Shown: one piece after another, positions 1,871-56,800 of the stretch
How the letters are laid out: the number at the start of each line of letters is the position of its first letter
Position numbering within the stretch: the stretch's first letter is position 1
NCBI RefSeq assembly: GCF_018977255.1
Contig: NW_024704765.1
Coordinates: forward strand, 5,952,001 to 6,016,000
DNA from: Callorhinchus milii
Lineage: Eukaryota
Direction of reading: 5' to 3'
DNA: 64,000 nucleotides
Notes under the pieces: generated by a model
Database searches by the model: none
Seen by the model: only the letters and a program-made list of their open reading frames with translations
Told to the model about the DNA's origin: nothing
Position numbers and translations under genes: made by a program

Positions 1871-2235
1871 ACTAAACCAGATGCCAACAGTTGTTAAAAT
1901 ACTGTATAAACAGCTTAATGGCCCCACCTAGTGGTCATAAATGCCATTACATGGTTTCTGATGCCACCAATTATCTTCACATTAAAACAGAACAAACTCG
2001 TATTTTAATAGCATCTTGTCATTAATAATATTCCTTAATTTGTTAAAGCATCTTTCCCGTTGGGAGGACATCACAAAGCGCTTCACGGGATGTACTGTAA
2101 ACTTCAACGACTGCACATGTTCGATCCGCTCGTGTCAACAGGTCGGATTGTGTAAACACGTCATTTCGCCAGAACAAACTTCCACAAACAGCCCAAGCGA
2201 ACAGAGGAGTTTGCTCCCCTTTTCTCTTTTAAAAA

Positions 2236-3530
2236 TGGCAGGGCCAGCAGGGTCGGCAAGGTTGGTAGGGTTGGCACGGTTGGCAGGGTTGGTAGGGTTG
2301 GCACGGTTGGCGAGGTTGGCAGGGTTGGTAGGGTTGGCAGGGTTGGCGAGGTCGGCAGGGTCGGCGAGGTCGGCAGGGTCGGCAGGATTAGCGAGGTCGG
2401 CAAGGTTGGCAGGGTTGGCGAGGTCGGCAGGATTGGCAAGGTCAGCAGGGTTGGCAGGGTTGGCGAGGTTGGCAAGGTCAGCAGGGTTGCCAGGATTGGC
2501 AAGATCAGCAGGGTTGGCGAGGTCAGCAGGGTTGGTAAGGTTGGCAGGGTTGGCAGGGTTGGCGAGGTTGGCAGGGTTGGTAGGGTTGGCACGGTTGGCA
2601 AGGTCGGCAGGGTTGGCGAGGTTGGCAGGGTTGGTAGGGTTGGTAGGGTTGGTAGGGTTGGCGAGGTTGGTAGGGTTGGTAGGGTTAGCGAGGTTGGCAG
2701 GGTCGGCAGGGTTGGTAGGGTTGGCAGGGTTGGCGAGGTTGGCAGGGTTGGTAGGGTTGGCACGGTTGGCGAGGTCGGCAGGGTTGGTAGGGTTGGCAGG
2801 GTTGGCGAGGTTGGCAGGGTTGGTAGGGTTGTTAGGGTTGGCGAGGTTGGTAGGGTTGGTAGGGTTAGCGAGGTTGGCAGGGTCGGCAGGGTTGGTAGGG
2901 TTGGCAGGGTTGGCAGGGTTGGCGAGGTTGGCAGGGTTGGTAGGGTTGGCACAGTTGGCGAGGTCGGCAGGGTTGGTAGGGTTGGCACAGTTGGCGAGGT
3001 CGGCAGGGTTGGTAGGGTTAGCACGATTGGCAGAGTTAGCGAGGTTGGTAGGGTTGGCAGGTTTGGCGAGGTTGGCAGGGTTGGCAGGGTTGGCAGGGTT
3101 GTCAGGATTGGTAGGGTTGGCAGGGTTAGCGAGGTTGGCAGGGTTGGTAGGGTTGGTAGGGTTGGCAGGGTTAGCGAGGTTGGCAGGGTTGGCAGGGTTG
3201 GTAGGGTTGGCAGGGTCGGCAGGGTTGGTAGGGTTGGCAGGGTTGGTAGGGTCGGCAGGGTTGGTAGGGTTGGCAGGGTCGGCAGGGTTGGTAGGGTTGG
3301 CACGGTTGGCGAGGTCGGCAGGGTTGGTAGGGTTGGCAGGGTTGGTAGGGTTAGCACGGTTGGCAGAGTTAGCGAGGTTGGTAGGGTTGGCAGGGTTGGC
3401 GAGGTCGGCAGGGTTGGTAGGGTTGGCAGGGTTGGTAGGGTTGGCACGGTTGGTGAGGTCGGCAGGTTTGGTAGGGTTGGCAGGGTTGGTAGGGTTGGCA
3501 GGGTTGGTAGGGTTGGCAGGGTTGGTAGGT
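2236..3530. repeat. G-rich 9-bp minisatellite (GGCAGGGTT / GGTAGGGTT / GGCGAGGTT variants), ~140 units
   Basis: Directly visible 9-nt periodicity; it explains the long repetitive ORFs on both strands. Confidence 0.95.
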
Positions 3531-3685
3531 GGGGCATGGCCACGGAGGGATTTGAACATGAGGATCTTGGACTGGATTCGCCGGGCGAGGACAGAGGCGA
3601 CGGCCTCGGGAATCCCGGTGCACGAGAGCACATGGGCCGCGGAGGATGGCAGAGTCTCGGAATAGTCCAACACCGACATGAGGAA
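3531..3685 (-). mobile_element. L2-type LINE ORF2 C-terminal remnant
   Basis: Minus-strand translation VLDYS...SAAHVLS...RIQSKILMFKSLRGHAPP resembles the L2 RT tail (LDYCN...SAAR.L...RI.FKIL..FK.LHGLAPPYL). The same motif occurs in the L2 piece near 52000. Confidence 0.6.
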
Positions 3686-3703
3686 ACCATCAATGGAGAG
3701 ACA

Positions 3704-4068
3704 ACGCCCCGCCCAGTGATTGACAGATCGACAACCAACGCCCCGCCCAGTGATTGACAGATCGACAACCAACGCCCCGCCCAGTGATTGACAGATCGAC
3801 AACCAACGCCCCGCCCAGTGATTGACAGATCGACAACCAACGCCCCGCCCAGTGATTGACAGATCGACAACCAACGCCCCGCCCAGTGATTGACAGATCG
3901 ACAACCAACGCCCCGCCCAGTGATTGACAGATCGACAACCAACGCCCCGCCCAGTGATTGACAGATCGACAACGCCCCGCCCAGTGAGGGGACAATGCCC
4001 CGCCCAGTGATTGACAGATCGACAACGCCCCGCCCAGTGAGGGAACAATGCCCCGCCCAGTGATTGAT
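3704..4068. repeat. 34-bp minisatellite (GCCCCGCCCAGTGATTGACAGATCGACAACCAAC), 12 GC-box-bearing units
   Basis: Unit starts at 3706, 3740, 3774, 3808, 3842, 3876, 3910 and 3944, then shortened units at 3974, 3997, 4027 and 4050. Confidence 0.95.
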
Positions 4069-4435
4069 AGCCGGCGGCGGGGGCGGGGGGTGGGGGAGAG
4101 AGGAGGAGGCGGTCACGTGCTACACCCGCTGACGACGGGCCGTGACGGCTGCTCACGTGACGTCAGGCGGGCTGGCCCCGGTGTCACGCGGTCGGGGGGC
4201 TGTCAGTCTCCGCGGGAGGTGGTGGTGGCGGCGGCGGCGGCCTCGGTTCCTGTCGGTGTCCGGTGGGAGGATGCGGAGGCCGCGGCGAGGATGGAGACGC
4301 TGAAAGTGAAGGACCGGATCCTGGAGAACATCTCGCTGTCGGTGAAGAAGGTGAGAGGCCGCGCGCGGCCTTAGCGGGGAGCGCTGGGGAGGGGGGACCG
4401 GGGGTGTTGATGAGGGACCGGCGGGGGTTGGGCGG
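4069..4435 (+). promoter_or_regulatory. PLEKHM2 CpG-island promoter / exon 1 with E-box (CLEAR-like) and CRE sites
   Basis: Very GC- and CpG-rich. GTCACGTG at 4112-4119; TCACGTGAC at 4153-4161 overlapping TGACGTCA at 4158-4165. Confidence 0.75.
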
Positions 4436-7400
4436 GTGTCTCTCTCCCCTCTTCCCCCCCCACACACACCCCATCCCCCCCTCTCTCTCCCCTCTCCCCT
4501 CCCCCCACACACAACCCCCCCTCTCTCCCCTCTCCCCCCCCACACACACCCCCTCTCTCCCCTCTCCCCCCCCCACACACACCCCATCCCCCCCTCTCTC
4601 TCCCCTCCCCCCCACACACACCCCCTCTCTCCCCTCTCCCCCCCCCACACACACCCATCCCCCCTCTCTCTCCCCTCCCCCACCCCCCCTCTCTCCCCTC
4701 TCCCCTCCCCCCACACACAACCCCCCTCTCTCCCCTCTCCCCCCCCCACACACCCCATCCCCCCTCTCTCCCCTCCCCCACCCCCCTCTCTCCCCTCCCC
4801 CCACACACAACCCCCCCTCTCCCCCCCCACACACACCCCACCCCCCCTCTCTCCCCTCCCCCACCCTCCCTCTCTCCCCTCTCCCCTCCCCCCACACACA
4901 ACCCCCCCTCTCTCCCCTCTCCCCCCCCACACACCCCCCTCTCTCTCCCCCTCTCCCCCCACAGACCCCCCCCCTCTCTCTCCCCCCCTCCCCCCCACAC
5001 ACCACCCCCCCTCTCTCTCCCCTCTCCCCACACACACCCCACCCCCCCTCTCTCTCCCCTCTCCCTCCTCCCCCCCCCCCCACACACCACCCCACCCTCG
5101 TCACCCGCTGCAATTTAACAATATAAAAACACACAGTCACTACACTTTACTATAATAATCCTTGCATTGATATCTTGCGTCTTATCACGTCTTCGAGACC
5201 CCCCCCCCCACCCCCCCCACTCAAAGCGCTTCACCCCTTTGCAGTATATTCCGCAGAGCGCCTCTGAGATGCGATGAGGCGCACGTGTATCAATTGCTGC
5301 AATTATTATTATTATTATGAAATACAGCATTTTTTTTCTTTTGTTGTTCTTCTCCTTCAGTCACCCTCCTATCCCTCCCCTCCCTGCCCTCCACCCCTCC
5401 TGATTCCAACCCCCCCCACCCCGCCCGCCCCAGTCTGGGACTGTCCAGAGCACCTTGGGACGTCCTCCCGATGTGAAAGGCGCAGTGTCAACGTAATCCG
5501 TTGTCGTTGGTGGCCGTTGATGTCCTCTCCTCGTCCCGGCAGACTCACTCCCAAATTGAAATTTAATTTGCCGCCTCTCCTTGTCGTCGGGACGTCCTCC
5601 CGACGTGAAAGGCGCTCTATGAATGCAATCTTGTTGTTGTTGTTGTTTTGCGGGATGTCGCTGGGCCCCTTCAGGACATTTCTTTCACGTATGGAAGGTA
5701 TGATATAATAAAGAAGTGTAAGTTGTAACTCGTTTACCAGAGGGTTAAACGGGAGTGACATTTCTTTGCAAAGTCCATTAGACCCGTGGCATCGCCCAGG
5801 AGAGTTATTAGGTCTGTCCCGAGCCTTGTGTTTACTCGTACATCTCGCTGACCAATATGGGAGGAATTTTGGGACTATGTTAAAGGATTGGCTCCCGTGC
5901 AGTTCTCCGTTTAGCCTAATGATCGTAGTGCATCAACAGAGTCGAGTAGAAGGTTGCAAAATAGGTTAGTGCAAAGATGGCTCTTTGGTCCATTAGCTCC
6001 TATCTTTCCAGAATATCCAGCCGACCATCTTCCCGTTACAAGTTTTCTTTAACTTCTCTTTTTCTGTGGGCTTCAACTTTCTGCACAATGTAAAGCAGAA
6101 TTCTCACCAAACACATAATTTTTTCCCTGTTTGTGGCTTCCACTATTACGGGCACTCTACATCGTAGCTAAGAGGATAACTGTTGGTCCTGAACATGATT
6201 ATGTGCTTTCGTGTTTCTCCTCAGAGCTACATCCAACTGCAGCTCCTCAACTTGGGAAAAGCTGAGTGTCCTTGAATGTGCATTTTACCCTTGTTTTTAG
6301 TGCAGACTGATTTCCTCAGCATTATATCATTGCCCTTGGTTCTGTGGGCAGAATAAAATGTCGTGGAAGGTAAAATATTTTGAAATAACTTTCAATGGTT
6401 GATATAGTGTTGATTCAGTGCTCTCTTTTAAAGCATAAGTGAGCATTTCAAGAGGAAAGCTTAGTTCCTCGTCAGCTTGACACTTTGACTTGTGATACAC
6501 CATGGAAATATAGTGCACCAGCACAAAAAAACATTCTTTCAGCCCATTATACTGCTGCTTTTCTCCACAAATCACCTAATCTAATCTTATTTTCCTATCC
6601 ATACCTTTTAATATAATTCTTCTTCAAGCATCTATGTAATTTCCTTTTAGAAGTCTCTTCCCTCCTGTAGCTGCAGTTTGTGGCAGAGTTCCACATTGCA
6701 ACTTCTGTGCAAAGAAGTTTTTTTTTCTAACTTCCACCCTTAATTTTGTGAAGTGCCGTCGTCTGAATTTCACAACCCTCTGTTTCCTTGTTTCTGGGTT
6801 CTTATCGTACTAGTTTTGTCCGGAAGATGCTGTTCTGTTCTGCTGATATGCGCTTTACGTAAGACCAGTCCCTTAAAGGGACATTCTGTGTTAATGTGAG
6901 GAAAAGATAGCATTGATCTGTAGCTATTTTAATTGCTGATTTCTCTGTGTGGTTTGAAATATTCAACAGTCCACAGTGCTAATCACCGTGTAACCCTGGA
7001 CTGATTCTATACAATGGAGCTCTTTTACTGAGCCAGGTTGGTAAATGCTAGAGTTTCTCATCTATTTTAAATGCTGGAGTTTCTCATCTATTTTTGAACA
7101 ATGCGCACAATCCAATAGAACATACTGCTCTCTGCACATGTTCAGGTCCTGCAATGGACATAGCACCGAGTGGTTCATGGCTCCTCCCTGTGTAACAAGC
7201 TTGGACACTAACTCCAATCCCTGTCGGTTTGGATTCCCGATTATCAGGGATGAAGTTTGTTCAGTTATGAAGCCAGACTTGAGAAGTTAGCGTTGTTTTC
7301 ACTGGAGCTAAGTGGGTTGAGGGTGACCCGCTGAAGGTCTTCAAGATTATGAAACTTTATGATTGGGTAATTAGTAATAATTATTTTCATTGGCTGACAA

Positions 7401-16400: not shown

Positions 16401-19400
16401 GTGGAGCGGAGAGAAGCATTCACAAGTCGGAAATTGTACCTGAAAGCACCAGCCACCAAACGACACTGCTTGAAGGATGCAATGTCACTTGTGGCCATTG
16501 TTTACTTCTGCAAAGAAGATTAGAGTGGGGTTTCTCTGACCGAGAGCGTGAATGGGGTTCAGAACTTGGTCCTTCGGGGGTTCCTTTAAATCTGGAGGAT
16601 GTTCACTTTGTTATATTTGCCTTTCCACTGCCACATGGCCCAGACCAATTCAGCTACATAAAGGCCTCTACAGGTTTATAGAACATTGTCAGTGTGCTTC
16701 ACACTTGCCCCTATATTGCATTGAAACATGATTGAACCCTGTGAAGTCTACTTTTGGGGGTAAGATCCCCTTTCCTCCCAAAGAAGGAATGGAAATGGCT
16801 GGATTTCTACAACAACAGATCTTTGAGAAGCGTTAATGTGATTACATGCAGTGTGAGCAGCGTTGTGCTAGTGAACAGCTGCATTCTAGAGTTTGACAGA
16901 TGAATACTGTAGCTTCATTGAAAGGAAATAAAATTTCAGTTAAAACGTCTGAATTATAGCATCAGTTTAGTGAATTTATTTTCCTCTCAGATCTGCAGTT
17001 ATGCTGGAATAAAGACAAAAAGTTTGTGTAGAAGAAAATAACTGCTGACCTCTTGCCCATTGTACTTCTTTGCATTTGTCGGCAGAGGGTGAACTGACGG
17101 ATACAATCAGCAGCTGCCCCAGATCTGGGACTTCTGAGAGTTTAAACAAAAGCAATGGGAAGAGCCCCACTTTACGCCACAATCCTTTCAACACCGAGAA
17201 GGTGGAGGCACGGAGCATGCCGGAGCTCAGCACGGTGCCCAGCACCGAGTGTGAAAGAGAGGAGAGCAATGGAAATCTGCAGGATTCTGCAGAGCTTGAG
17301 CTGGAGCTTGAAGTGATTAGGTAAATCACTGTAAATGGAGCTGAGTTCAGGAAAGAAGAACTTGCATTTTTATATTGCCTTGTGTGTCAGTGTCTCAAAG
17401 CACTTCACAATGTCTCTATACTGCGGGCAATTGGGAAGTTGGGAAAATTGGGGTGGGGGTGGGAGTGTTGAGTAAAGGTGGGGAGGGAAGGCACAAGATG
17501 AAGGGAATGTGGGTGAGCATTCCAGAGAGCTGAAGAGGCTAGCTAGCGGTGGTAGAAAGGAGTGAATAAGGAATGAGTAGTGGACCAGAAACCATAGACA
17601 GGAGAATTGGGCTGTAGGAGATGGCAGGGATTGGGTGGGCAGGAATGTGAAGTGATTTGTAATGTTGATCTGCTCGAGTACGGAAAACCAGTGAAACCTG
17701 ATGAAGATACAGTCCATCCACAGGCATTGTAGTCCTTAGCTGTACTTCACATGCAAGTGGTTCTGATTCTTTATATGGTTTCGATTTCTCAGATTGGCGA
17801 AAAGGAAAAAAAACACAAAGAAGAAGAGGGCAAAATCCGAGGAACGAGTTCTTGAGGACAAAACTCTAGTGGTGCTGCTGCCAAAGGAGGAAGCAAAGTC
17901 CGAGCAGGATTTCACCAGCCGTTTGGCAAAAGATCAGAACAATTCACTGTATTTGCAGAATTGCAAAGAGGCCTCAGGTGGGGAGGAGGGCAGCAGGCCC
18001 CGGGACAAGCCACGTTATGCAACCCGTCGCATGTCTGAGGCAGATAGCCAGCCGGGCCTGCTTATACCACAGATGAAGGACACCTCAATGAACAGTGTAG
18101 GGAATCCTTTAAGTGAGGTGATTGAACGGCTGAATGGAACACTAGATGACAACAGCTGGACTGCGGATAATGATCAGCCTGAGCAGCCCTTTCGGACCGG
18201 TATCCCGGGGGACACCCCGGATGAACCACCCTATCGGGGGTATAGTGAGCGGAAGCCACCTACCATGGACTTCTACAGGTTTGCACTCGAGAGTCCAGGT
18301 GCTGGTGCAACAAGTGGCAGCGACCATGACACTTCAGGGGATGGTCAACAAGCGCATGTTTTTAGTAGCTATGAGAGTGCTGACTCGGAAGCGTGCAAAA
18401 GGGAGGAAATCTCTGGGACCGTAGAGGAGGCTGCTACCCCACGGAGCGATGGAGTGGAGACGACAGGGACACAGCGGCTCTCTGGGCAAGATGATCTGAT
18501 GGAGGTTTGCGGTCCCAGCCAGGAACAGTCTGTCATGCAGCCTGGAGAACCTGAGAATCCCAACACGGAGGGAGCTGGCAGTAGATCATCAGAGAAAGAA
18601 GTTGCTAGTAGTAGCCCTGTAGAGGGAAAGGGGGCTGGAATTAGCCACTTGGAGCTTGAGGAACCTGGCAATAACACCTCGGAGCTAGAGGGAGCTCGAA
18701 ATAGTCCCTCAGAGTTGACTCATTCAGCAGAATTCAGGTAAGATGCTCTGATTATTATACTTGAAACCTCATCCCTTCTCTATATGTGTTGATGTTGGAG
18801 CTATTTACGTACCTTGGAATGGTTTTAATCTTGCTGGAGCGATTTTGAAAAGTGCACAGGAAATTCACTTCACCTGTTTAAATAATATCCCAACAGAGGT
18901 GCTGTGTTACGTGATGACCCTTACTTGTATTTGAGCAGTAGGTTACGCAGCATCAGCCAGAAGTCTGGCAACAGCCAGAATGCTGCACTTTACCTGGGGC
19001 AGGAACATATCTGTTCATGTCTTCTGTCCTCATCACTTTAGGGTGGACAACAACCTCCTGCTTCTGTTGATGATTCATGTCTTCCGAGAGAACGAAGAAC
19101 AACTCTACAAGGTAAGAGATCCTCAAAGAGAAATTCCCCAAACAAAAGTAATGGGAGTCTCTCTAATAAATGGTTTAAATGTAGAGATGTGTAACATATT
19201 AATGAACTAGCAGTATGTGCTTTTCCTTTTGTATGAAATGCAATGTATATTGATGCATGTTGTTGTTTTCCCTTTGTGAACCACCATGAGGGAGTAGAGT
19301 GGAGTAGCTACCACACAAAAACACTGTGACATATATCTGAATTCAGGTTTGATTGTAGCTTTTGACCTTAATACGAGGAATTATTGTAAAAGGGAACGGA

Positions 19401-32033: not shown

Positions 32034-32035
<2 letters not shown>
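31740..32035 (+). promoter_or_regulatory. SLC25A34 CpG-island promoter
   Basis: GGGGCGGGG boxes, inverted CCAAT (ATTGG at 31804-31808), CpG-rich leader before the ATG at 32034. Confidence 0.65.
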
Positions 32036-37933
<5,898 letters not shown>

Positions 37934-39876: not shown

Positions 39877-42501
<2,625 letters not shown>

Positions 42502-43105: not shown

Positions 43106-43680
43106 AAACAGAAAGATCTTGCATTTATAAATCACTTTATTTCACTGAAATGTTTTGCGGTAATTACTGTTCAGGGCACGTGCTGCTTTATTGGGAAACG
43201 CAACACGACATTTGCGTACAGTTGGGTCCCACGATCAGCCACGTGGTGAATGGAGGAGGATTCAAGACTGAAGTGGATAGATATTTGTCAGGTCAGGGTA
43301 TTAAAGTATTCAGGGCAGGTAATTGGACTTGAGGTACAGATCAGCAGTGATCTTATAGAATAGTGGAATATGCTCAAGGGGCTGAATGGCCTCCTCCTGT
43401 TTCTGTTTGTATGATTGTTGGTTGGATTCCTCTTTAGCAATTCACCTCCAGGACCTGGGTTTAACATCTCGTCCAAAGGACAGCACTTCAGATAATGCAG
43501 AGTCCCTCTTCCACCCCCCACCACCACCACCACCACCACCACCGTACCGCACTGGAGCATCAGCCTAGACTGTGAGCCTAAGCCTTAACGCAGGACTTGA
43601 ACCCACAGCCCAGCGAACTCAGTGATAAAGAGAGAAGTCCTTTCAGTCCCGGTGACATGCCGTTTCCCCACCTTAGACTG

Positions 43681-43712
<32 letters not shown>

Positions 43713-44593
43713 CCTTGCATTTGACACAGCGCCTTTATCACGCCGTCGGGACGTCTCAAAGCGCTTCACAGGATACACTGTAACGTGGAGGGACAGTAAT
43801 GTTGTGGGCGGAAAAAGGGGAACGCGTCTGAACTCAACGCCGCTCACGAGCGGACGGTCGGGTACTGTCGGGGCTGTTGGGATCAGACCTGCGCAGTCGT
43901 GTTGACTTGTGCCCAGTAGGTGGCAGCGCTGAGCTGTGGATGGCCTCAGGCTCCCAAACCTCTGCCAAACGCTTTGGGCTGAAAATCCGCGGCATTGGGT
44001 GCGTCCAATTCTCACGTTGTCGAAATTTCCACTTCTGCGTTGTCGGAGTCCGTGTCGTGGAGGGGCGATGGCGGAGCCTGACTCCGGGGGGGGGGGGGGG
44101 GGTAAAGCAGAGGGATTGGGTCCAAGAGGGCCAAAGCTTCGGGGCGTAGTGGCTGAAAGCGCGGATGCCTAAGGTGGGGCGGATGGGACGAGAGGAGCAA
44201 CAACAAAATTACATTGGCATATAGGGCCTTTTCACGTGGGGAGGGCGACAACGAGCAGGAGGCCAGAGCCAGCCAGCCGAGCGGAGGCAGCGGAGCGGAG
44301 CGCGGAAGAGAGGCGGCCAGAGAGGTCGGGAGGTGTCGGGACGTGAAGGGACTTGTAGACGTGTGAGTGGGAGGATTTTGAAATCGAGTGGTGGGACGTG
44401 GAGTGAACTTTACGGTGTGGCGCCTCTCGCCCGGCGGGACACACGCTGAGATACGCTGAGTAAGCGGGCAGTGGACTGAGCTACAGCCGAGCTGCCCGTC
44501 CAAACCCACTGGGAGCCGCCACCCAGTGCGGCGTCAGTGTCCGCAGGTATCCGTGAACGTCTCTCCTTGTTGTTGCCGCTGTCCCCTCTCCCC

Positions 44594-46749
44594 TCAGCAC
44601 AAGCGTTTCCTGTAGACGTAGTAAGCGAGCAAGCCAGCGCTCAGCAACAGCAGCGTGCCGCAGCACCCACGGGCCACCGACTGCTCCGCATTCTCTTTCT
44701 TAGTGTATCGCTCGACGAAGCCGGACTGAGAAACAAAAAGAGACACCGGGAGCGGGTCTGAGCCAGTGTGAACCGAGCCTAGAGCAGGGCTAGTGGGTCA
44801 GTCAGGGCTCCCCGGCCTTTTTACAGCCCGCTATAACAACACCAACAACAACAACAAATTTCATTTATATTTAGAAAAATCCTCGCATTTGATACAGCTC
44901 CTTATCCGTCGTCGAGACGTCTCAAAGCGCTTCACAGGATATACAGTGAAGCGCAGTGACTGCGTGTTTTTGCGGGCGAAACACAGCAGCCAATTGCGCC
45001 CAGCGACGTCCCCACAAACAGTTGTTTTGAAGGAGTATTACCCCAGAAAGCCGTCCGCCAATCGGCCATCAAAGGTAAACAAATGCCTGCGGGGTAAGTA
45101 AACATGCCCCACCCGGGAATCGAACCAGGGTCCTCTCGTTTGCGAGGCGAGCTCGCTAACCACTACCCGGTGGGACTCCAAAAATAATTCCACCAAACAC
45201 AGCTGTGCTGCTCAAATTGAAATGGCGCTGACAGACCTCTCACCAACGAAATGATTTGTACGCGGCAACATTGAGTCAAAGCTGCTAAATGTGTAACGCG
45301 GTGGACACGCGGGCTGACAAAATAACTTTGCTCAACTCTAGCGTCAAAGAGAGTGTTACTGTGCAGAGTGCAGGCGTGTGGGGGGGGGGAGTGCGGTGGA
45401 AATGAGTGGGGTCTAAAATGTAAGGTTTCTAGTAGGTTTCCTTACTCCGCACGCCTCTGTTTGCCGAGCAGTAAGTATGAACCCAGTTGTTAGTCGATTG
45501 GCGCCGAACGCTTTCCAGGGGTGTAATAAATCCCTTCAAAAAAAAAACGATGATAATAATTTGGTCACTCAATCCACGACCGTTTGTGGGGACGCTGCTG
45601 TGCGCAGTTGAGCGCTTTGAGACGTGCCAATGGCGTGATAAGGCGCTGTATCGATTGCAAGGATTATTATATTATTCCCTGTGTTACAAATTCCTGTGCA
45701 ACTCCAGAACAGACGGACAGACAGACAGACAGAGAGCTTTCCAGCAGTCGCAGCCTGTGAATTGTGAGCGCTGTTTCCCAGAAGATATTTACGGGTTCAC
45801 TTTGGCGACAGCCGGTGTGTTGTGAGTGACTGTTGCACAGCTGAGTTGCTGGGTTCGCTGATGTGTACTGAGCCACAAATAGTCCAGTCCAGTCCAGCTT
45901 GGAAGACGGCCAAGGCTGCCTGCCTGAGAGGCAAGCAGATAGGGCCAGCTCCCCTCAACCTCGCTGTCCAACGATCACTCGCCAGCCATCACTCACTTGC
46001 CTTTATATATCGTGGCCTTCACGTGGGGGCAACATCTTGTGGCTCTTAACAGTGACGGAGCCTGACACGTAGTAGCCGGAGGAGGGGAGAGGGAGAAAGG
46101 AACTGACCGGAAGCACGGTCGAAGAGGAAGGTCCTCAGGCGAAGGAAAGCAAGAGGGGAAAACGCAAGGGGATTGAGAGAGAAACTCCCCAGATTTCTGG
46201 GCATTAGTGCATTGAGACGAGGAGTGAGTCAGCGAGTGACGTTTTATTGCCCAACTTTGGGGCTTGTGTCCTGTTACTCACCCATCCTCCCTTATCTACG
46301 ATGTCCGGACACACCTTGGCTTCCACGTACTGTCCCACCCTCACCTCGAGCTCCTCCAGCACCGACCCCATCCCGTTCTCCTGGCAGTAAATGGCCATCT
46401 GTCCGGCCAGCACGTAGATGGAGAGGATCCCACTCCAGGTCAGTCGCTTGCGCTGCCAGGACTCCTCCGGCTGAAAATGCTCGTCCAGGATCTTGATCAG
46501 GAAGTCGCAGGCGTTGTCCAGCCGGACGTCCCTGAAGATCCGTGGCCAGCGCTTGAAGAAGATGGGATATTTCCCCATCAGGTCGGTGCCAGCGTGGCGG
46601 AGCGCTGCGGAGGCTGGGCTGGGAGCTGCCTTCGTGGTCCTGCCCGTCACAAAGCTGATGTAATCCCTCGACATGACATGGGCTTCCGTCACCACAGGGT
46701 CCTCACACGGACCCCCGGACACCTGAGCAGGGAACAGCCTCAAGAACAT
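44594..46749 (-). CDS. bcl2l16: Bcl-2 family protein with BH4-BH3-BH1-BH2 regions and a C-terminal TM anchor, likely Bcl-wav (bcl2l16) ortholog; 2 exons, ~199 aa
   Basis: Exon 1 46749-46282 (MFLRLFPAQVSGGPCEDPVVTEAHVMSRDYISFV...AALRHAGTDL...TWSGILSIYVLAG...VDKGGW|gtgagt). Exon 2 44725-44594 follows tttgtttctcag (SGFVERYTKKENAEQSVARGCCGTLLLLSAGLLAYYVYRKRLC*). The phase-0 intron directly after BH2 GGW is the canonical Bcl-2 family intron. The start codon is uncertain because a possible acceptor at 46722 could take an upstream exon. Confidence 0.88.
44875..45180 (-). mobile_element. tRNA-derived SINE in the bcl2l16-like intron
   Basis: Reverse-complement head near 45100-45180, body and tail toward 44875. 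Confidence 0.8.
45432..45675 (+). mobile_element. 5'-truncated tRNA-derived SINE
   Basis: TTTCCTTACTCC...GATAAGGCGCTGTATCGATTGCAAGG(ATT)n. Confidence 0.8.
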
Positions 46750-47074
46750 TGACCCCTCTTGTCGCTCTCTCTTCTCTCTCTCGCTCTCGTGCTTGTGTGG
46801 CAACCGGACCCACGAACAACTGACCCACAACTCACTGAAGGGTCTAAAAATAACCTGGACATTGAGCATCGAGGCGACAGGACTGTATAAATACCTTTGG
46901 CCTAATATCAGGATCTGGGTTTCAGAGACGGTCAATGACAAACACTGCAATGTGTCAGGAAAAGAACTTGCTTTTTTTTTTAAAAATAGAGCCAATAAAT
47001 CTCACAAGGGCTTTACAGGCATTCCCTTGACATCTCGTGACCAGGAGGGTGGGGCGGGGGGGGTTGTACACAAA

Positions 47075-47333
47075 CACACAGAACATATATTGTAAAGTGG
47101 ATTGACTGTGTATTTTGTGGGCGAAATGTGCGCAGAGTCGTGGATTGAAGTGATTATTACCCCCGGTAAAGTGATCCGCCAATCGACTCACAACCGGGTT
47201 CCTACTTACTGCCGGGTGAACAGAGGCGTGTGGAGTGAGGAAACTTGCCTAAGGTTTCACCCTGACTCGGGTATCGAACCCGGGTCCTCTCGCTTGCGAG
47301 GCGAGCGCTCTAACCATTGCACAACAGGACTCC
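47075..47333 (-). mobile_element. tRNA-derived SINE
   Basis: Reverse complement of GGAGTCCTGTTGTGCAATGGTTAGAGCGCTCGCC...GGTTCGATACC. Confidence 0.85.
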
Positions 47334-48419
47334 ATCTTAGCGAGTTCAAAATCCCGAGGTGGGGGCTTGAACCCACCTTCTGACCCAGAGGTGAGCGAGC
47401 CGGGCTGACACACACACACACACACACACACACGCGTGTATATCTGAACGTAGAGAGCGAGGTCTTCACAGTTTCATCTGCCACCGAGGCCTGGGAAAGT
47501 CAGGCCTTGTTTATACTCTTGATCCCAGAGATTAGGGAGGAAAAATGTGTCTTGTAAACGCGATAATGATCACAATTTGCTTTAGACGCGGCCATTGGCC
47601 CATCTGCTGCGATGCTGCAGTGACAGAACATGAGAATGGCCACAGCCCACACACATACACACGATATCTCAGGTTTGTTTTTCCATCCAGCGCGTCGTCG
47701 CTCTAACGTGAGACCGTCTGTCGCGGCACCAGCTCCTGAGGACAATCAGACTCTCGGACCGGAGCTTAGTAATCCTGGCTTTCGATACAGGCCTTATCGC
47801 GTCTTCCAAGACGTCTCCCAGCGCAGCACAGGACACACCGGAAAGGGAATCGACTGTATGTTTCTTCATCAGCTTCACTGATACAGACAGTGGCTGACGT
47901 GAGGGTCATCCTGCAAGTGGTTGATAATATAAGACTGTTGTTGCACACGGAACAGCCCTGACCAGAGATCGCAGACAGCCTGGGCTGGGGGGGGGGGGGG
48001 GGGGGGTAGGGGCTGGAACATACTGTATTTCTGACTTTTTTTTACCCCCCCCCACCCCCCTGGCGTTTATTCTCCCTCCCGCCCACCATCCCCCCGTCCT
48101 GCCCTTTAACATAAACCGTCTGTTTGTGCAGGTTTCGCAGTGAGGACAAAGGAATCGTCAGTGTATTTAAACAAATGCAAGTTGCAGTGTCAGAGAGATT
48201 AATGCAAAACACACACACAGGAACAGGCTGCTTCTTGTCAAGGGCACGTAAGGTAATTACCTCACTTGGAAAGAACTGAGCTTATCTGAGAATCTGCACA
48301 CTGCCCCTGACAGTGATATGACAAACTGACTGACTGACTGAGTGAGTGAGTGAGTGAGACACTGGAGCCTGTGCACAGGGGGCAGGTTAGTCTCTGAGCA
48401 GCTTCCTGTTTCGGTACTA

Positions 48420-50822: not shown

Positions 50823-53800
50823 ATGTCTCAGACAAGGAAAGTCAGCTCGGTTTACATCCGGCTCGTGACTCCTGGCACAATCTGTGCCTCAAAGACATAC
50901 AGCTCTCTCGAGGCTTCAAAGGCAGACTATAAGCCAGGCTCCTCCGCATCCGAGGACAAGGTCTACACCAATGGACACGGAAGCAGGGCAACAGCAACCA
51001 GAGCGGCCTCCACCCCAACAGCCTTTAAAGCTGCTAACGGAGGTAAGAAACAACAACAACAAATTACATTTGTATAGTGCCTTCACATCGGGAGGACATC
51101 CTAAGGCACTGGACAGTCAGGGATTTGGACCCGAGTTAGGGGTTGGGATCAGGAGGGGTGAAGGGCTGGGAGGGTAGGGGTAGGAGGGTGCCTGAAGGCG
51201 CGGTTGAAGAGGAGGGTCTTGAAACGAGCCTTGGAGGAGGTAAGGGAGGCAAAAAGATTTGCAGGCATCTCAAAGCGCTTCACAGAATATTCACGGGAGT
51301 GACGGGTGTGGATCCACGTGGAGATACATAAAGAGGCAGCGAATCAAAAGAAGCAAAGTTGTGTGTTCACTTCTCATTCCGTGTGTGCCCTTTATTTGCA
51401 GATTTTTTGCCCCTTCCTCCTCCTCCCCCTCCTCCTCCTCCTCCCCCTCCCCCTCCAGTGAACGAATGGAATGCTCTCCAGCCTGGGGAGCTGCCACTTC
51501 CTCCCCCACCCTCTCCCTACCGCAGGGAGGTGCAGGCACCCTTCGGACTCGACTATACTCCCACCAGACTGAAGGCCCCGGGGCTCGGAACATCTCCAGC
51601 CGAGCAGGTAGGACACAGATTAACAATAAATTACACTTGTGCAGTGCCCTTCACGTCGGAAAGACGTCCCAGGGCGCTGGATAATCAGGGGTTTTGTCCC
51701 CGAGCTGGGAGTTGGGGTCAGAAGGGGAGGAGGGCGTTGTGGGGTAAGAGGGTGGCCGAAGGCACAATCGAAGTGGAAGGTCTTCAGACGGGACTTGAAA
51801 GAGGCAAGAGAGGGAGTGAGGTGGAGGGATTGCGGGATAAGAGTTCCAGAGTGTGGGGACAGAGATGCTGAATGCCCGACTGTCAATGGTGGGAAGGGAA
51901 GTGCGGGGGACCTGAAGCAGCTGGTGTCAGCCGAGCGGAGGGAGCGGACAAGCTGATATGGGGTTATGAGGTCGGGGAGGTGGGGGGAACAAGACCGTGG
52001 AGGGCCTTGAAGGTAAGAATGAGGGTTTTGTTCTCGATTCCCTAAGGAACGGGTAGCAAGTGAAGCGGGGAATAACGGGGGTGATAGGTTCCCGGAGCCT
52101 GGTGCGGGAGAGGACACGAGCTGCAGGGTTCTGAATAATCTGCAGTTTGTGGAGGGAAGAGTTGGGAAGTCCAATGAACAGGCAAAACTGTGAGTTAATT
52201 CACTTTGCTCTCTCCTTAGATGCTGCCTGACCTGCTGAGTGTTGCCAGCGACTTCTCATCCCATTCCTGTTCTCTTTCCTCTAGCCTCGCTCTGCAGCCT
52301 CTGAGCCTGAGGGATATCGAGCTCGGACTGCGGACCACACACCAGGGAATTCTCCGTCACTGAAACCAGAGAGCAGCTTGAATGGATTACCCCAGCCAGG
52401 TATGGACCAGCAAAAAATGCCCGAAATATGAAATATGGGTGCGATAGTTTTTAAGACTGTGTTGGGGGAGAATAATTCTCAAGATGGTGTGTGGGAATCT
52501 GTAGTGTGGAGTCCCCGTAGCGTAATGGTTAGCCCACTCGCCTCGCAAGCTAAAGGACCTGGGTTTGATTCCCGGGCGGGGCGAAACGTTAGGCAAGTTT
52601 TGTTACTCCACACACTTCTTTACCCAGCAAAGGAACCCGGTTGTTAAGCCGATTGGCAGATCGCTTTCCGGGGGTAATAATCCCTTCAATCCACGACTGA
52701 GTGCAATTGGCTGCTGCGTTTGATCCACAAAGTACAGTCAAATCCATTTTACAGTATATTCTGTGAAGCGCTTTGAGACATCCCAACACCATGATAAGGC
52801 ACTATATCAAGCGCAAGGATTATTATTATTATTATTAACCTGGCTGGTTGTGAGGAGGGGGTTTCTTGCGTGTGGGTATGTGTGTGTCCATGTGCATGTG
52901 TGGGGTAGTTGGTTGGTTGAAGCCGCTCTCTGTAAATTCTCTTGGGTTTTGTCTCCTAGAGATCTGTGGCTATTGCCAGCAGGTGATTCCACTGATCGTC
53001 CCCGCTGTCCAGGCTATGGGCCAGTTGTTTCACGAGGATTGTCTGAAGTGTGGGAAATGCCAATGCAGACTCATTGGCAAGACTTACTACAACTTGAAAG
53101 GCATTCCTCACTGTGATCCCTGCTATCAGGTACTGTTCATCCTCACCCCTCGGGCATGAAAACCCTTGAGTTTGCATTAACTTTTTACATCCCCCCCTCC
53201 TCCTGACGTGAAAGGCCCTGTGTAGATATAATTTGTTGTTGTCGTTAAACCATAGGACACTCTGGAGAAATGTGGGAAATGCGGGAAGAAGCTGGTGAAT
53301 GAAATCATGAGAGCCCTGAACATGGCCTTCCACCCCGAGTGTTTCACGTGTGTCGTGTGTCACAGACCCATCGGGAATGAGCGTTTTGGACTGAACGAGG
53401 CTAACGAGATCCATTGCATCCGAGATTTTCAGAGGTACGTATGTACGTCACATGTCATTGGAGCTCAAGGACCTGCAGTTGTGATCCACGGGGCCCTGGT
53501 TTAATGCGCGACATTGGTATGTGACGGTGCTTGGTGTCATGGTGGACACACGGAACCTAGTGCAGGAGACAATACAAGTTGCAGAATTCTGCAATGGTGT
53601 TTGGAAATTCAGTGAGGAGAATTTGACCACTCTAGAGGTGTATTTATATAGCGTTTTTCATGCTTGATAACGTCTCAGAGCATTTAAATATAAATCTAGA
53701 TAAAGACGCGAATGAGGGATTCAGTTGTGTTGCGGGTGAGTTCGGGATGGAGGTCGAAGGAATTGCAGAGGGAAAACGAGCATTTGTTGTTGTTGCTATA

Positions 53801-56800
53801 AAGCGGTGGCTTAGGGTTTGAAAGAGAACAGGTCAATAGGACAATCAAGGTTGCACCCTGCCTTTGGACCTCGCTGCGTGTAAAAATGGCGGCTGATTTT
53901 GCTTACACAAACAGCCACTATGCTTGACAATAATCACTGTAAAGCGCCGGGACCTGTCGGGCTGCACAAAAATAAAAGTTAAGTTCTTGTATTTATTCCG
54001 CTACGGTATAAAGATGGTATGGGGCTGCGATACCATTTGCTGACAGCATGTGGGACTGTTGTGCTACCGAAAGATACTGAGCTGGTTATAAATTGGCTTC
54101 CTCTGAGCATCAGGTTTGACAGAAGAACACAGTATCGAGAAGAGCTTCCTGTTTGTTGCATTGTTATTGCTTCCGACAATCTATCTGCAGGCTCTCCGCA
54201 ATATGTATTATTTTTATTCACGCAAACTTGCCTTTTTTTTCTAACAAAGACAATTCACGAAATGTAGCGCGAAGGTTGGTTTTATCCAATAAATGGAGCA
54301 GCCATTTTGAACGCAGCAAGGTCCCACAAACAGCCGACCTTTTCCCCACCTTATAATAATAATAATCCTTGCATTTCATACAACGTCTTATCACATCTTC
54401 CAAGACACCTGGAAACGCTTCGCAGGATATACTGTAAAGTGGATTGACTGCATTTTGTGGGAGAAAATTAATATTTATCACGTGTACAAAATCCTGACGT
54501 TTGTCCCTTTTGTTGCTACAGGAGATATGCCCCACAGTGCTCAGTCTGTAACCAACCAATTATGTCTGAGACTGAGGCAGAAGAATGCATGAACATTGAG
54601 CTGTTTGATCGGCACTTTCACATCAACTGCTACAAATGTGAGGTAAGGAGGGTCCTGTTATCTGAACTTATGTACCTGCCATCTTTCAAGCATGATGCAG
54701 TCTATGCGGGACAGAACTCATCGGGATGAATTTGTAACTTGTGGCATGTGAAGCTACGGAGACTGGTGAGGAAACAGTTACCAGGTCCGGGTGCTAAATT
54801 GTCATTGATTCACTGCAGTAAAAATACTATTTTTGGATGGTATTAACCAATTGGATGCTTATAGATGTTGACTTTAGACTTGCAACATCCGATGTAATCC
54901 TAAAGCAAATCAATACACTCCACAAGGCAAATTCAAGCACTCTGTGAAACCAGTTTCAGAATCATTCTGGCAATATGGTTTGACCACTGGATCCTGGGAG
55001 GAGTTAGCGTGGTGAGAACAGGAAGGGTTCAGCAGGGAAACCTTTACAGTCCAGGAAGCACACAATCTGACAGGAAACCCATGAGGACATCAACACACTC
55101 CAGGTGGTGAGTTGTGTTCCCGAGATACACAATGGGTGTCACCTCTCTGTGAAAAGGACAGTCCTCCCGTACACAGGCACTGATGTGTGGAGAGAAGTTT
55201 AAAACTGCTTAGGTTGAAAGGCAGGTGGCACCCACTAGACAGCCCATTGCCCAGGAGGAAGAGAATCTGATCCTCTCACTCCCAGACTCACATCCATCTT
55301 TCAGTTAAACTAAGTGAAGCTATACCGCAGGCCTCACCGTCAGTCAAAGTGAAACGCCAGTCCACAGGTGTTTTAAAGAACGACGGAAAACCCGATTGCA
55401 AATTAAGGCTGAATTTAAGAATTTTCCAAGGCCTTGCTCAGTGTTACATTTTAAGGCAACGGTTGGTCTGAAGGCTAAGATTGTAAGGATTTGAATCTCT
55501 ACATTGTAAACAAGATATTAAATGTGCAAAAATAATCCATGTGACCTTGAACAATAGGCTGATGGAGCAGCCATTTATATCATGTGCTGTCACAAGCGGC
55601 CGATTCCTACACTGCGTGCATTGTTTACACAGGCCAACGTTAATAGTGCATCTATTTAGTTCTATTTTGAAGGATTTACTGTTAGTATTTTGAGTAGATG
55701 CTGGTTTCTTTAGTCCCAAATTTGCCTGTACTTCATGCGAAACAGGTGATACAGTGGTGTGTGCAGGTGCTGCTCAGGTTAGCCTGCGAGCATGGCTTCA
55801 GCACATAGTTTCAAAACTTTCTCTAGTGTTAAAATCAGGGTCCTACAGCTCCATCAGAATTAATGGGGCCTAATTTATGGTGTATTGTAACAGGTTTCCT
55901 TACTAAGGAATAAGATTGGATTTCCAGTTGACGTGGAGGTGAGGGCATGGGGAAAGAATCTGCACCACAAATAGATCTTGGCCGTGCAAGGTTCCCACGA
56001 GCGGTTTGCCTGGACATATTTCTGGGAAAGGGAAGGAGTCCCCATTTGTGATGTTCTTTATTAGGGAATCCCATTAGAATTGCAAGTTAGACCCAGGTAA
56101 CACCTGCCTGCTGGACTCTGACTATTACCACGTGTTCTCAGCAAAAGTAATACTGACAGTGCAGACGCTCTTTGTTTGCTACCATTATAGCACTAAGCTC
56201 CAAATAATTTGACTGTCTTAATGGTGGGCAGTTGTGTGGGGAAAAACATACAGTAAAAATTCATTTTGTTCATATTTGACCAGTTCCTACGCACATCTCT
56301 ATTAATCCATCTGAAGAATTACCTCTCACCCAGGTTTATTTCGAGAAAAGTGAATAAAAAGGGGGAAAAAAAATGATATATAGCAACCTAATCTGTTTAT
56401 TTTCCCACGGAGATAATCCTGATTGTGACCTGACTGTGGCTTCTCCTTTTATACTTAATCTCCTGGAGGAGGTAAGTGACTGCAGGGAAAACTCCCAAAC
56501 ACTTATGAAATCCTTCCTCACCCCAAAGGCAATTGAGTTAATATGTGGAGTATTAATCTAACATCAACACCTGTGTTTTTAGGCCAGTTCCCTCTCCGCC
56601 CTCAATGCAACCACAGTGAGGTCAGACTACCCAAAGCCCTCGCTGTTAAATTTCACCCTCACATGACCAACAAATTCACAAAAATAAGCTTTAGCTTCTT
56701 TGGTTTAATTCTCGTCCCTAAGTCAGGAGCTTGTGGATCTAAGCCTCTCATTGCAACTTTGAACACAAAATCTGAGCTGACACTTCAGCACAAGTTGGGA

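What the first reader, a model, noticed from the sequence alone, without database searches (positions are those of the whole stretch)
44594..46749. Intact Bcl-2-family gene (Bcl-wav/bcl2l16-like) hidden between TMEM82 and FBLIM1
Seen: a 468-nt open exon ending GGW|gtgagt and a 132-nt exon encoding SGFVERY...TM-RKRLC*, with a clean polypyrimidine acceptor. The ORF track shows only the first part and misses the TM exon. Knowledge: a phase-0 intron after BH2 GGW and a basic-tailed C-terminal TM are Bcl-2 family hallmarks; the human PLEKHM2-SLC25A34-TMEM82-FBLIM1 block has no Bcl-2 gene here; Bcl-wav was described from fish and amphibians as a mitochondrial Ca2+/VDAC-linked regulator absent from mammals. 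Inference: the sequence closely matches my recollection of zebrafish Bcl-wav (DP..EA....DYIS, SAALRHAG, FPIFFRRWPR, ILDEHF, VLAGQ). An intact copy in a probable cartilaginous fish would place its origin at or before the jawed-vertebrate ancestor, with later loss from this exact locus.
Basis: partly seen in the sequence, partly recalled or inferred. Interest (0 to 1): 0.8.

Follow-up and report, generated by a model that had tools for sequence, protein, structure and literature searches.

The report
Elephant-shark Bcl-wav (bcl2l16) gene, already annotated
This is a real, spliced and transcribed two-exon gene for the Bcl-2-family protein Bcl-wav (bcl2l16) in a cartilaginous fish, but public annotation already names it, so it mainly confirms that this fish-and-frog gene dates back to early jawed vertebrates.

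Summary
On the minus strand, a 468-nt open exon (46749-46282) ends GGW|gtgagt. A 132-nt exon (44725-44594) follows a polypyrimidine tract and cag, and encodes a hydrophobic tail ending RKRLC*.

- **Family:** exon 1 matches Pfam Bcl-2 over the whole profile (54.4 bits, cut-off 31.4). Its model has the Bcl-2 fold.
- **Splicing:** one transcript-like contig in a public run joins 44725 directly to 46282, so the predicted splice is used.
- **Orthology:** the reading as Bcl-wav/bcl2l16 is supported. Identity is 71-77% to shark and ray "BCL2 like 16" and 55% to a cypriniform BCL2L16, against 30% or less to any other Bcl-2 protein. It falls in a 41-row bcl2l16 clade (100/99), inside a chondrichthyan subclade (99/98).
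- **Not hidden:** NCBI already lists "BCL2 like 16 [Callorhinchus milii]". That protein is 100% identical, uses the same junction, and starts 40 codons further upstream.
- **Neighbours:** TMEM82 lies on one side (Pfam). A three-LIM gene lies on the other; it was not shown to be FBLIM1.
- **Not testable here:** teleost synteny and loss from this locus in amniotes.
- **Literature:** held papers limit Bcl-wav to bony fishes and anurans, so the deeper origin is a small, database-visible extension.
- **Oddity:** the BH3 aspartate is Thr only in this species, 1 of 41 orthologues.

The parts
46282..46749 (-).
   Evidence: Pfam PF00452 54.4 bits over residues 50-156; AlphaFold model pLDDT 88.6
44726..46281 (-). 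Phase-0 intron (1556 nt, gt...ag) holding a tRNA-Ala-like SINE copy at 45105-45176 and other high-copy repeats
   Evidence: skipped by X5 record 17
44594..44725 (-). Coding exon 2: 43 codons plus TGA, with a hydrophobic stretch GCCGTLLLLSAGLLAYYVY followed by RKRLC (tail anchor)
   Evidence: best 19-residue Kyte-Doolittle mean 1.55; 49% identical over 41 aa to the C-terminus of P0045
46750..46979 (-). Transcribed 5' region. It holds the upstream in-frame ATG at 46869 used by the NCBI model (239 aa) and an out-of-frame ATG at 46862 opening a 40-codon ORF
   Evidence: X5 record 17 reaches 46949 and X1 record 5 reaches 46979; P0001
44086..44593 (-). 3' untranslated region, at least this long. Further contigs cover 43800-44102. 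The nearest AATAAA signals on this strand are at 43192 and 43141
   Evidence: X5 record 17, X1 record 2
40685..42206 (+). Neighbour: TMEM82 exons, tail-to-tail with the Bcl-2 gene
   Evidence: Pfam PF15816 at 59.4, 212 and 85.5 bits on three ORFs
52959..54726 (+). Neighbour: LIM-domain gene, exons for three LIM domains, head-to-head with the Bcl-2 gene. FBLIM1 by position only
   Evidence: Pfam LIM 39.8, 47.9 and 17.0 bits (the third is below the 22.9 cut-off); atlas search gave only generic LIM clusters
32034..37933 (+). Further neighbour: mitochondrial-carrier gene exons (SLC25A34-like by position)
   Evidence: Pfam Mito_carr 67.5, 31.4 and 39.1 bits

Best explanation
The locus is the Callorhinchus milii orthologue of bcl2l16 (Bcl-wav). 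It is a two-coding-exon, transcribed and correctly spliced gene. Its product is a roughly 199-239-aa multi-BH-motif Bcl-2 homologue with a C-terminal tail anchor. Shown here: gene structure, splicing, Bcl-2 domain and fold, subfamily membership, and strong conservation across jawed anamniotes. Inferred from zebrafish work (passages in PMC8038216, PMC4632309 and PMC3995731): the protein sits in the mitochondrial outer membrane through its tail anchor. It binds VDAC1 through its N-terminal BH4-like helix and so raises mitochondrial Ca2+ uptake through the uniporter. When overexpressed it promotes Bax/Bak-dependent apoptosis, which an NR13/Nrz-type protein can restrain. I put identity at about 0.93 and the transferred mechanism at about 0.5-0.6.
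For: Pfam Bcl-2 at 54.4 bits (cut-off 31.4), profile positions 1-100 of 100. 100% identity to NCBI 'BCL2 like 16 [Callorhinchus milii]' with the junction ...DKGGW|SGFVERY.... 71-77% identity to five shark and ray BCL2 like 16 proteins, and 65% to the Latimeria one. The profile search returned 64 of 64 hits with E<=1e-5 from this one family: 27 teleosts, 19 anurans, 6 chondrichthyans, 2 sturgeons, Amia, Erpetoichthys, Latimeria, Protopterus and 6 unnamed. Against cypriniform BCL2L16 P0045, exon 1 is 55% identical over 143 aa (E 1e-57) and exon 2 is 49% over 41 aa (E 1e-13), with the exon border aligned at residue 156/157. In the tree, 41 family rows are split from 4 distant Bcl-2 outgroups at 100/99, Chondrichthyes at 99/98, and Callorhinchus is sister to the elasmobranchs at 97/90. 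phmmer against 1.84 billion representatives found nothing outside the family above 55 bits or 30% identity, apart from repeat-protein artefacts. The model has pLDDT 88.6 and pTM 0.82 with eight helices. Foldseek matches Bcl-xL, Bcl-2, BOK, NRZ, A1 and BAK at TM 0.65-0.74 and probability 1.00. A spliced contig in X5, and contigs in X1 and X6 that stop exactly at 44725 or 46282. Of the 41 rows, 27 columns are invariant, including F64, F65, R67, W68 and P69 of the FPIFFKRWPR block.
Against: No functional data exist for any cartilaginous-fish copy. The run kinds are the tool's guesses ('RNA?'). Unspliced contigs also occur (X1 records 3 and 4, X3 records 10 and 11). The splice joint appears in table 8 but not among the joints printed in its table 5. 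The zebrafish protein itself was not among my hits. The link to Bcl-wav rests on the NCBI name, on a loach orthologue, and on an eye comparison with the 26-residue zebrafish Bcl-wav BH3 peptide printed in PMC6148235 Methods, where I counted 16 of 26 identical. That the gene symbol bcl2l16 equals bclwav is my recollection. The canonical BH3 Asp is Thr in this species alone, 1 of 41 rows. This could weaken the BH3-dependent part of the mechanism. My outgroups were invertebrate or unnamed Bcl-2 proteins, not named vertebrate BOK, MCL1 or BCL2L10.
Confidence: 0.9

Rival explanations
1. It is the bcl2l16 orthologue, but in the holocephalan lineage its BH3-dependent, pro-apoptotic, Nrz-restrained activity is weakened. 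The BH4/VDAC calcium role would then be its main function.
For: BH3 position 55 is Thr here and Asp in the other 40 of 41 orthologues. There are further unique replacements at near-invariant sites: Y24H, Y33F, R/K151V and D/E102R. The end branch is 0.31, against 0.07-0.12 in elasmobranchs. None of four runs shows a variant at that codon (table 3). In zebrafish, the Bcl-wav BH3 peptide binds NRZ at only 3.57 uM, and NRZ R86A abolishes binding (PMC6148235, Results passages and Table 1).
Against: An Asp follows directly at position 56 and might substitute. L50, R51, A53 and G54 are kept. No binding data exist. One species only.
Confidence: 0.2
2. It belongs to another Bcl-2 subfamily (BOK-like or NR13-like, as many automatic names of its amphibian and sturgeon relatives say), and the bcl2l16 label is a naming artefact.
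For: Several relatives carry names such as 'bcl-2-related ovarian killer protein-like', 'anti-apoptotic protein NR13-like' or 'bcl-2-like protein 1'. The family profile hits PDB BCL-2, BOK, Bcl-xL and BCL2L10 about equally weakly, at 29-39 bits.
Against: Those oddly named proteins fall in the same 100/99 clade as the teleost BCL2 like 16 rows. They share the invariant FPIFF(K/R)RWPR block. Identity to solved BOK, NRZ or Bcl-xL structures is only 16-20%.
Confidence: 0.03
3. It is a decaying or non-functional copy that is merely transcribed.
For: All three candidate start codons have weak context. An out-of-frame upstream ATG opens a 40-codon ORF. Several lineage-specific replacements fall at conserved sites.
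Against: The frame is open across both exons with canonical splice sites. Identity to elasmobranch orthologues is 71-77%. All 27 family-invariant columns are kept. The fold is confident. A spliced contig exists.
Confidence: 0.03

Closest known systems
Zebrafish Bcl-wav (gene bclwav / bcl2l16; Prudent et al. 2013, seen only as cited in PMC3995731, PMC4632309, PMC8038216 and PMC6148235)
   Same: Same subfamily by similarity and tree, tested through teleost BCL2 like 16 proteins. Same layout: N-terminal BH4-like helix, BH3 (AALRHAG...), the FPIFF(K/R)RWPR block, W-S in place of the usual BH1 NWGR, BH2 GGW, and a tail anchor. No amniote counterpart among the 58 named hits.
   Different: Cartilaginous-fish host, whereas the held papers give its range as 'bony fishes and anurans', 'teleost fish' or 'unique to fish'. 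BH3 Asp is replaced by Thr. Function is untested here.
NCBI protein 'BCL2 like 16 [Callorhinchus milii]' (P0001, 239 aa)
   Same: 100% identical over exon 1, with the same exon junction and the same C-terminus.
   Different: Starts at the upstream in-frame ATG (46869), adding 40 residues with no counterpart in the other orthologues. Only one shark model (P0004) also has an N-terminal extension, and it is not alike.
Classical multi-motif Bcl-2 proteins with solved structures (Bcl-xL, Bcl-2, BOK, zebrafish NRZ/BCL2L10)
   Same: Same fold, TM 0.65-0.74. Same Pfam family. The intron directly after the BH2 Trp codon and a C-terminal membrane anchor are family traits by my recollection.
   Different: Only 16-20% identity and 29-39 bits to the family profile. 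The BH1 NWGR arginine is absent across the whole bcl2l16 family (W-S invariant).

Membership tests
Bcl-2 family (Pfam PF00452) | Significant match to the family profile above the curated cut-off | tested here: met
   54.4 bits against cut-off 31.4, E 2e-14, profile 1-100 of 100
Bcl-2 family (Pfam PF00452) | All-alpha Bcl-2 fold (helical bundle around a central hairpin) | tested here: met
   Model pLDDT 88.6, eight helices. Foldseek gave 91 PDB matches with E<=0.001, and the top-listed ones are all Bcl-2-family chains, TM 0.65-0.74
Bcl-2 family (Pfam PF00452) | BH motifs: BH3 L-x3-G-D, BH1 NWGR, BH2 GGW (motif definitions recalled) | tested here: inconclusive
   BH2 GGW is present. BH3 has L50...G54 but Thr55 instead of Asp. 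BH1 reads T-W-S-G, and W-S is invariant in the subfamily
Bcl-2 family (Pfam PF00452) | C-terminal hydrophobic tail anchor flanked by basic residues | tested here: met
   Exon 2: 19-residue hydropathy maximum 1.55, followed by RKR. Membrane insertion itself was not tested
Bcl-2 family (Pfam PF00452) | Intron directly after the BH2 Trp codon (recalled as a family trait) | tested here: met
   GGW|gtgagt, phase 0. The junction is used in X5 record 17
Bcl-wav / BCL2L16 subfamily | Closest relatives are teleost BCL2L16 proteins, well apart from other Bcl-2 paralogues | tested here: met
   50-57% identity to the actinopterygian rows, bowfin and bichir included, 55% to P0045, against 30% or less for other Bcl-2 proteins
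Bcl-wav / BCL2L16 subfamily | Falls inside the subfamily clade, in a place consistent with the species tree | tested here: met
   Family clade 100/99, Chondrichthyes 99/98, split of sarcopterygians from chondrichthyans plus actinopterygians 94/90. The outgroup root fell among the anurans, which I read as a long-branch effect
Bcl-wav / BCL2L16 subfamily | Direct match to the experimentally studied zebrafish protein | tested here: inconclusive
The zebrafish protein was not among the hits. Only its 26-residue BH3 peptide, printed in PMC6148235 Methods, was compared by eye (16 of 26 identical).
Bcl-wav / BCL2L16 subfamily | Mitochondrial outer-membrane location, VDAC1 binding through BH4, raised mitochondrial Ca2+ uptake, Bax/Bak-dependent killing | not testable with these tools
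   Known for zebrafish only (passages in PMC8038216, PMC4632309; abstract of PMC3995731)
Bcl-wav / BCL2L16 subfamily | Shared synteny (tmem82 - bcl2l16 - fblim1) in teleosts and amphibians | not testable with these tools
   No tool here returns eukaryotic genome context. Only this window's own neighbours were seen

The most novel reading that the evidence does not exclude
Bcl-wav arose no later than the jawed-vertebrate ancestor. The holocephalan copy is a natural variant lacking the canonical BH3 aspartate. That would make it a ready-made separation-of-function form, keeping the BH4/VDAC calcium role but with impaired BH3-groove binding to NR13-type partners.
Probability: 0.15. Interest if true: 0.4.

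Novelty: already known. Interest (0 to 1): 0.22.

Why it matters
Bcl-wav is the one Bcl-2 homologue with a shown developmental role through mitochondrial calcium, and it has no mammalian counterpart. The papers I could read limit it to bony fishes and anurans. An intact, expressed copy in a chimaera, plus annotated copies in five sharks and rays, moves its origin to at least the jawed-vertebrate ancestor and makes its absence from amniotes a loss. This is a modest correction that public annotation already implies. It is not a discovery of a new gene or mechanism.

Tried and rejected
Naming the distant hits of the exhaustive phmmer search, to obtain labelled vertebrate paralogues for the tree. 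Of the 10 looked up, only 4 clusters carried a name: a Bcl-X-like IMG protein, a Branchiostoma NR13-like protein, a Hirondellea Bcl-2-like 1, and a generic IMG label. I therefore used distant outgroups, and the test against BOK, MCL1 and BCL2L10 was not done.

Showing that the LIM gene is FBLIM1. A PDB search of a candidate N-terminal exon gave nothing (2 hits, E about 0.8-1). The atlas search of a LIM exon returned only generic LIM clusters. Pfam says only LIM.

The ORF at 17794-18741 and the short ORF at 4288-4374, which I suspected to be PLEKHM2, gave no Pfam hit.

The original Bcl-wav paper (Nat Commun 2013) is not held. I could not check whether it already listed cartilaginous fishes. Supplements were not opened.

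Searches for print on chondrichthyan Bcl-wav:
- 'bcl-wav' + 'shark': 1 paper, unrelated.
- 'bcl-wav' + 'cartilaginous': 0 papers.
- 'bcl2l16': 3 papers, none on evolution; I read the passages of two of them and only the listing of the third.
- 'bclwav': 3 papers, the same group's.

Multi-stretch hits to bacterial repeat proteins (P0077, P0097 and others) were rejected as artefacts and not followed.
Full report
**Observation.** Read on the minus strand, the window has an ATG at 46749. An open frame of 156 codons follows and ends ...GAT AAG GGA GGA TGG at 46282, directly followed by gtgagt. After 1556 nt comes a pyrimidine-rich tract and cag, then a 43-codon frame from 44725 to a TGA at 44596-44594. 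Searches give the translations: the first ends DKGGW, and the second runs SGFVERY...GCCGTLLLLSAGLLAYYVYRKRLC*. The long ORF 46204-46995 reads through the donor into the intron, and the second exon appears only as an unrelated-looking 50-aa ORF.

**What it is.** I searched the model exon by exon and never joined the exons myself. Exon 1 matches Pfam Bcl-2 (PF00452) at 54.4 bits against a cut-off of 31.4, covering the whole profile. Exon 2 has no Pfam family, as expected for a tail anchor. Its best 19-residue hydropathy mean is 1.55, and the stretch is followed by RKR.

The word-indexed protein search with exon 1 returned 22 proteins with E<=0.001 out of 51 candidates. The first is NCBI's 'BCL2 like 16 [Callorhinchus milii]' (P0001, 239 aa), 100% identical. 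Its sequence contains ...DKGGWSGFVERYTKKENAEQ...RKRLC.

The next hits are 'BCL2 like 16' of Cetorhinus, Heptranchias, Chiloscyllium, Narcine and Hemitrygon (71-77% identity). After them come Latimeria (65%), a lungfish, sturgeons and anurans.

**Transcription and splicing.** The look-up of sequencing runs listed 14 runs of one organism from 4 studies. None is on record as RNA; the kinds are the tool's guesses. I laid X1, X3, X5 and X6 (three studies) on 43800-48300.
- In X5, record 17 (1316 letters) lies with letters 8-647 on 44086-44725 and with letters 648-1315 on 46282-46949. The intron is removed exactly at the predicted sites.
- In X1, record 2 ends at 44725 and record 5 begins at 46282. 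In X6, record 27 begins at 46282.
- Against this, contigs that cross the splice sites unspliced also exist (X1 records 3 and 4, X3 records 10 and 11).
- The joint is visible in table 8, but not among the joints printed in table 5, where 112 were not shown.

I read this as a spliced mRNA together with pre-mRNA or DNA. The transcript reaches at least 46949-46979 at its 5' end, and at least 44086 at its 3' end.

**Start codon.** All have weak context, and an out-of-frame ATG at 46862 opens a 40-codon ORF.
- The orthologues begin 7-9 residues before the conserved DPVV.
- V20, E22 and A23, upstream of Met26, are conserved.

So 46674 is unlikely.

**Subfamily.** A profile of the 22 first hits (A1) found 64 proteins with E<=1e-5 among the 8000 candidates scored. 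All belong to one family: 27 teleosts, most named BCL2 like 16; 19 anurans; 6 chondrichthyans; 2 sturgeons; Amia; Erpetoichthys; Latimeria; Protopterus; and 6 unnamed. No amniote, salamander, caecilian or cyclostome is among the 58 named hits. That search is not exhaustive, so this is absence of evidence only.

Against the cypriniform BCL2L16 P0045:
- Exon 1 is 55% identical over 143 residues (E 1e-57).
- Exon 2 is 49% identical over 41 residues (E 1e-13).
- The exon border falls at the same aligned position.

The exhaustive phmmer search of 1.84 billion representatives gave 44 hits with E<=0.001. Only family members exceed 38% identity. Other Bcl-2 proteins appear at 55 bits or less and 21-30% identity (names for some). 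A few multi-stretch hits are bacterial repeat proteins, which I regard as artefacts.

**Tree.** I built a maximum-likelihood tree of 41 named family rows and 4 distant outgroups. I left out the fragments, isoforms and unnamed rows among the 64.
- The family separates at 100/99.
- Chondrichthyes are recovered at 99/98, with Callorhinchus sister to the elasmobranchs (97/90).
- Actinopterygii are recovered at 99/97 and teleosts at 99/95.
- A 94/90 split sets the sarcopterygians apart from chondrichthyans plus actinopterygians. This is compatible with the species tree if the root is on the chondrichthyan branch.

The outgroup root fell among the anurans. With outgroup branches of 1.25-1.75 I take that for a long-branch effect, and the tool itself warns of it. 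The pattern is that of single-copy orthologues.

**Fold.** Exon 1 folded with 40 orthologues (A2) gives pLDDT 88.6, pTM 0.82 and eight helices. Foldseek finds Bcl-xL, Bcl-2, BOK, zebrafish NRZ, A1 and BAK at TM 0.65-0.74, but at only 16-20% identity. The family profile hits solved BCL-2, BOK, Bcl-xL and BCL2L10 about equally weakly, at 29-39 bits. No Bcl-wav structure is in the PDB copy. This agrees with the papers' phrase 'highly divergent'.

**Neighbours.**
- Plus-strand ORFs at 40685-42206 match Pfam TMEM82 (59.4, 212 and 85.5 bits). They lie tail-to-tail with the Bcl-2 gene.
- Upstream of TMEM82, ORFs at 32034-37933 match Mito_carr.
- On the other side, plus-strand exons at 52959-53129, 53256-53501 and 54472-54726 encode LIM domains (39.8, 47.9 and 17.0 bits).

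That this is FBLIM1 is plausible from gene order, which I know only from memory for human. My attempts to show it failed.

**Literature.**
- The abstract of PMC3995731 calls Bcl-wav 'restricted to aquatic anamniotes'.
- A passage of PMC4632309 says 'bony fishes and anurans'.
- Passages of PMC6148235 say 'found in teleost fish', 'unique to fish' and 'without a mammalian orthologue'.
- A passage of PMC8038216 gives the mechanism: a mitochondrial resident that binds VDAC1 via its BH4 motif, enhances mitochondrial Ca2+ uptake and is pro-apoptotic.
- No held paper combines 'bcl-wav' with 'cartilaginous'. The one paper that combines it with 'shark' is unrelated.
- The 2013 original is not held, and supplements were closed. 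An earlier mention of cartilaginous fishes cannot be excluded.
- That the symbol bcl2l16 denotes bclwav is my recollection.

As a partial check, the zebrafish Bcl-wav BH3 26-mer is printed in the Methods of PMC6148235 (UniProt D2Y5Q2, residues 42-67). It carries AALRHAGDELL and RFPIF, the family consensus. By eye, 16 of 26 residues equal the Callorhinchus stretch.

**How it most likely works.** Shown: a tail-anchored, multi-motif Bcl-2 homologue that is expressed and under strong constraint. It keeps all 27 invariant columns of the 41 orthologues. Inferred by orthology: outer-mitochondrial-membrane location, VDAC1 binding through helix 1, promotion of uniporter-dependent Ca2+ uptake, and a BH3-dependent pro-death activity restrained by an NR13-type protein.

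One point speaks against a full transfer of the mechanism. The BH3 aspartate (position 55) is Thr in Callorhinchus and Asp in all 40 other rows. Four further near-invariant sites also carry unique residues, and the end branch is long. No run shows a variant at that codon. In zebrafish, NRZ R86A abolishes binding of the Bcl-wav BH3 peptide (PMC6148235, Table 1). The Asp-Arg contact therefore probably matters; reading R86 as the partner of the BH3 Asp is my inference from general Bcl-2 knowledge.

**Verdict.** The claim of a hidden gene is not: the same model is public. The evolutionary point, an origin by the jawed-vertebrate ancestor, is sound but incremental and visible in existing annotation. 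Loss from this exact locus in amniotes and shared synteny in teleosts remain untested. Interest is low to moderate.

Noticed in passing
window 46585-46587 (codon 55 of exon 1): The canonical BH3 aspartate is Thr in Callorhinchus only, 1 of 41 orthologues. Unique residues also sit at four other near-invariant sites (Y24H, Y33F, D/E102R, R/K151V).
   Followed up: partly
window 45105-45176 and 47258-47330, minus strand: Two tRNA-Ala(cgc)-like elements, 81% alike over 70 nt. One lies in the intron and one just upstream of the gene. Contig depth there and at 44857-45007 and 45461-45611 runs to tens of thousands, so these are high-copy SINE-type repeats.
   Followed up: partly
window 46862 and 46869, minus strand: The transcribed leader holds an in-frame ATG (the NCBI start, adding 40 unconserved residues). 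This could regulate translation.
   Followed up: no
proteins P0077, P0080, P0097, P0102: Exon 1 gave multi-stretch phmmer hits (E down to 3.6e-9) to long proteins. P0077 and P0097 are named 'uncharacterized repeat protein (TIGR02543 family)' by the source, P0080 is unnamed, and P0102 was not looked up. Probably repeat-driven artefacts.
   Followed up: no
one search hit list: All 19 amphibian hits are anurans. No salamander or caecilian bcl2l16 appeared, which hints at further losses within amphibians. The search was not exhaustive.
   Followed up: no
window 2016-5155: Long GC-rich minisatellite-like arrays giving repetitive ORFs on both strands, beside a possible first exon at about 4288-4374.
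   Followed up: no
proteins P0008, P0009, P0011, P0012, P0018: Several public models of orthologues end in unrelated sequence right after GGW. They look like read-through into the intron, the same trap as the ORF track here.
   Followed up: no
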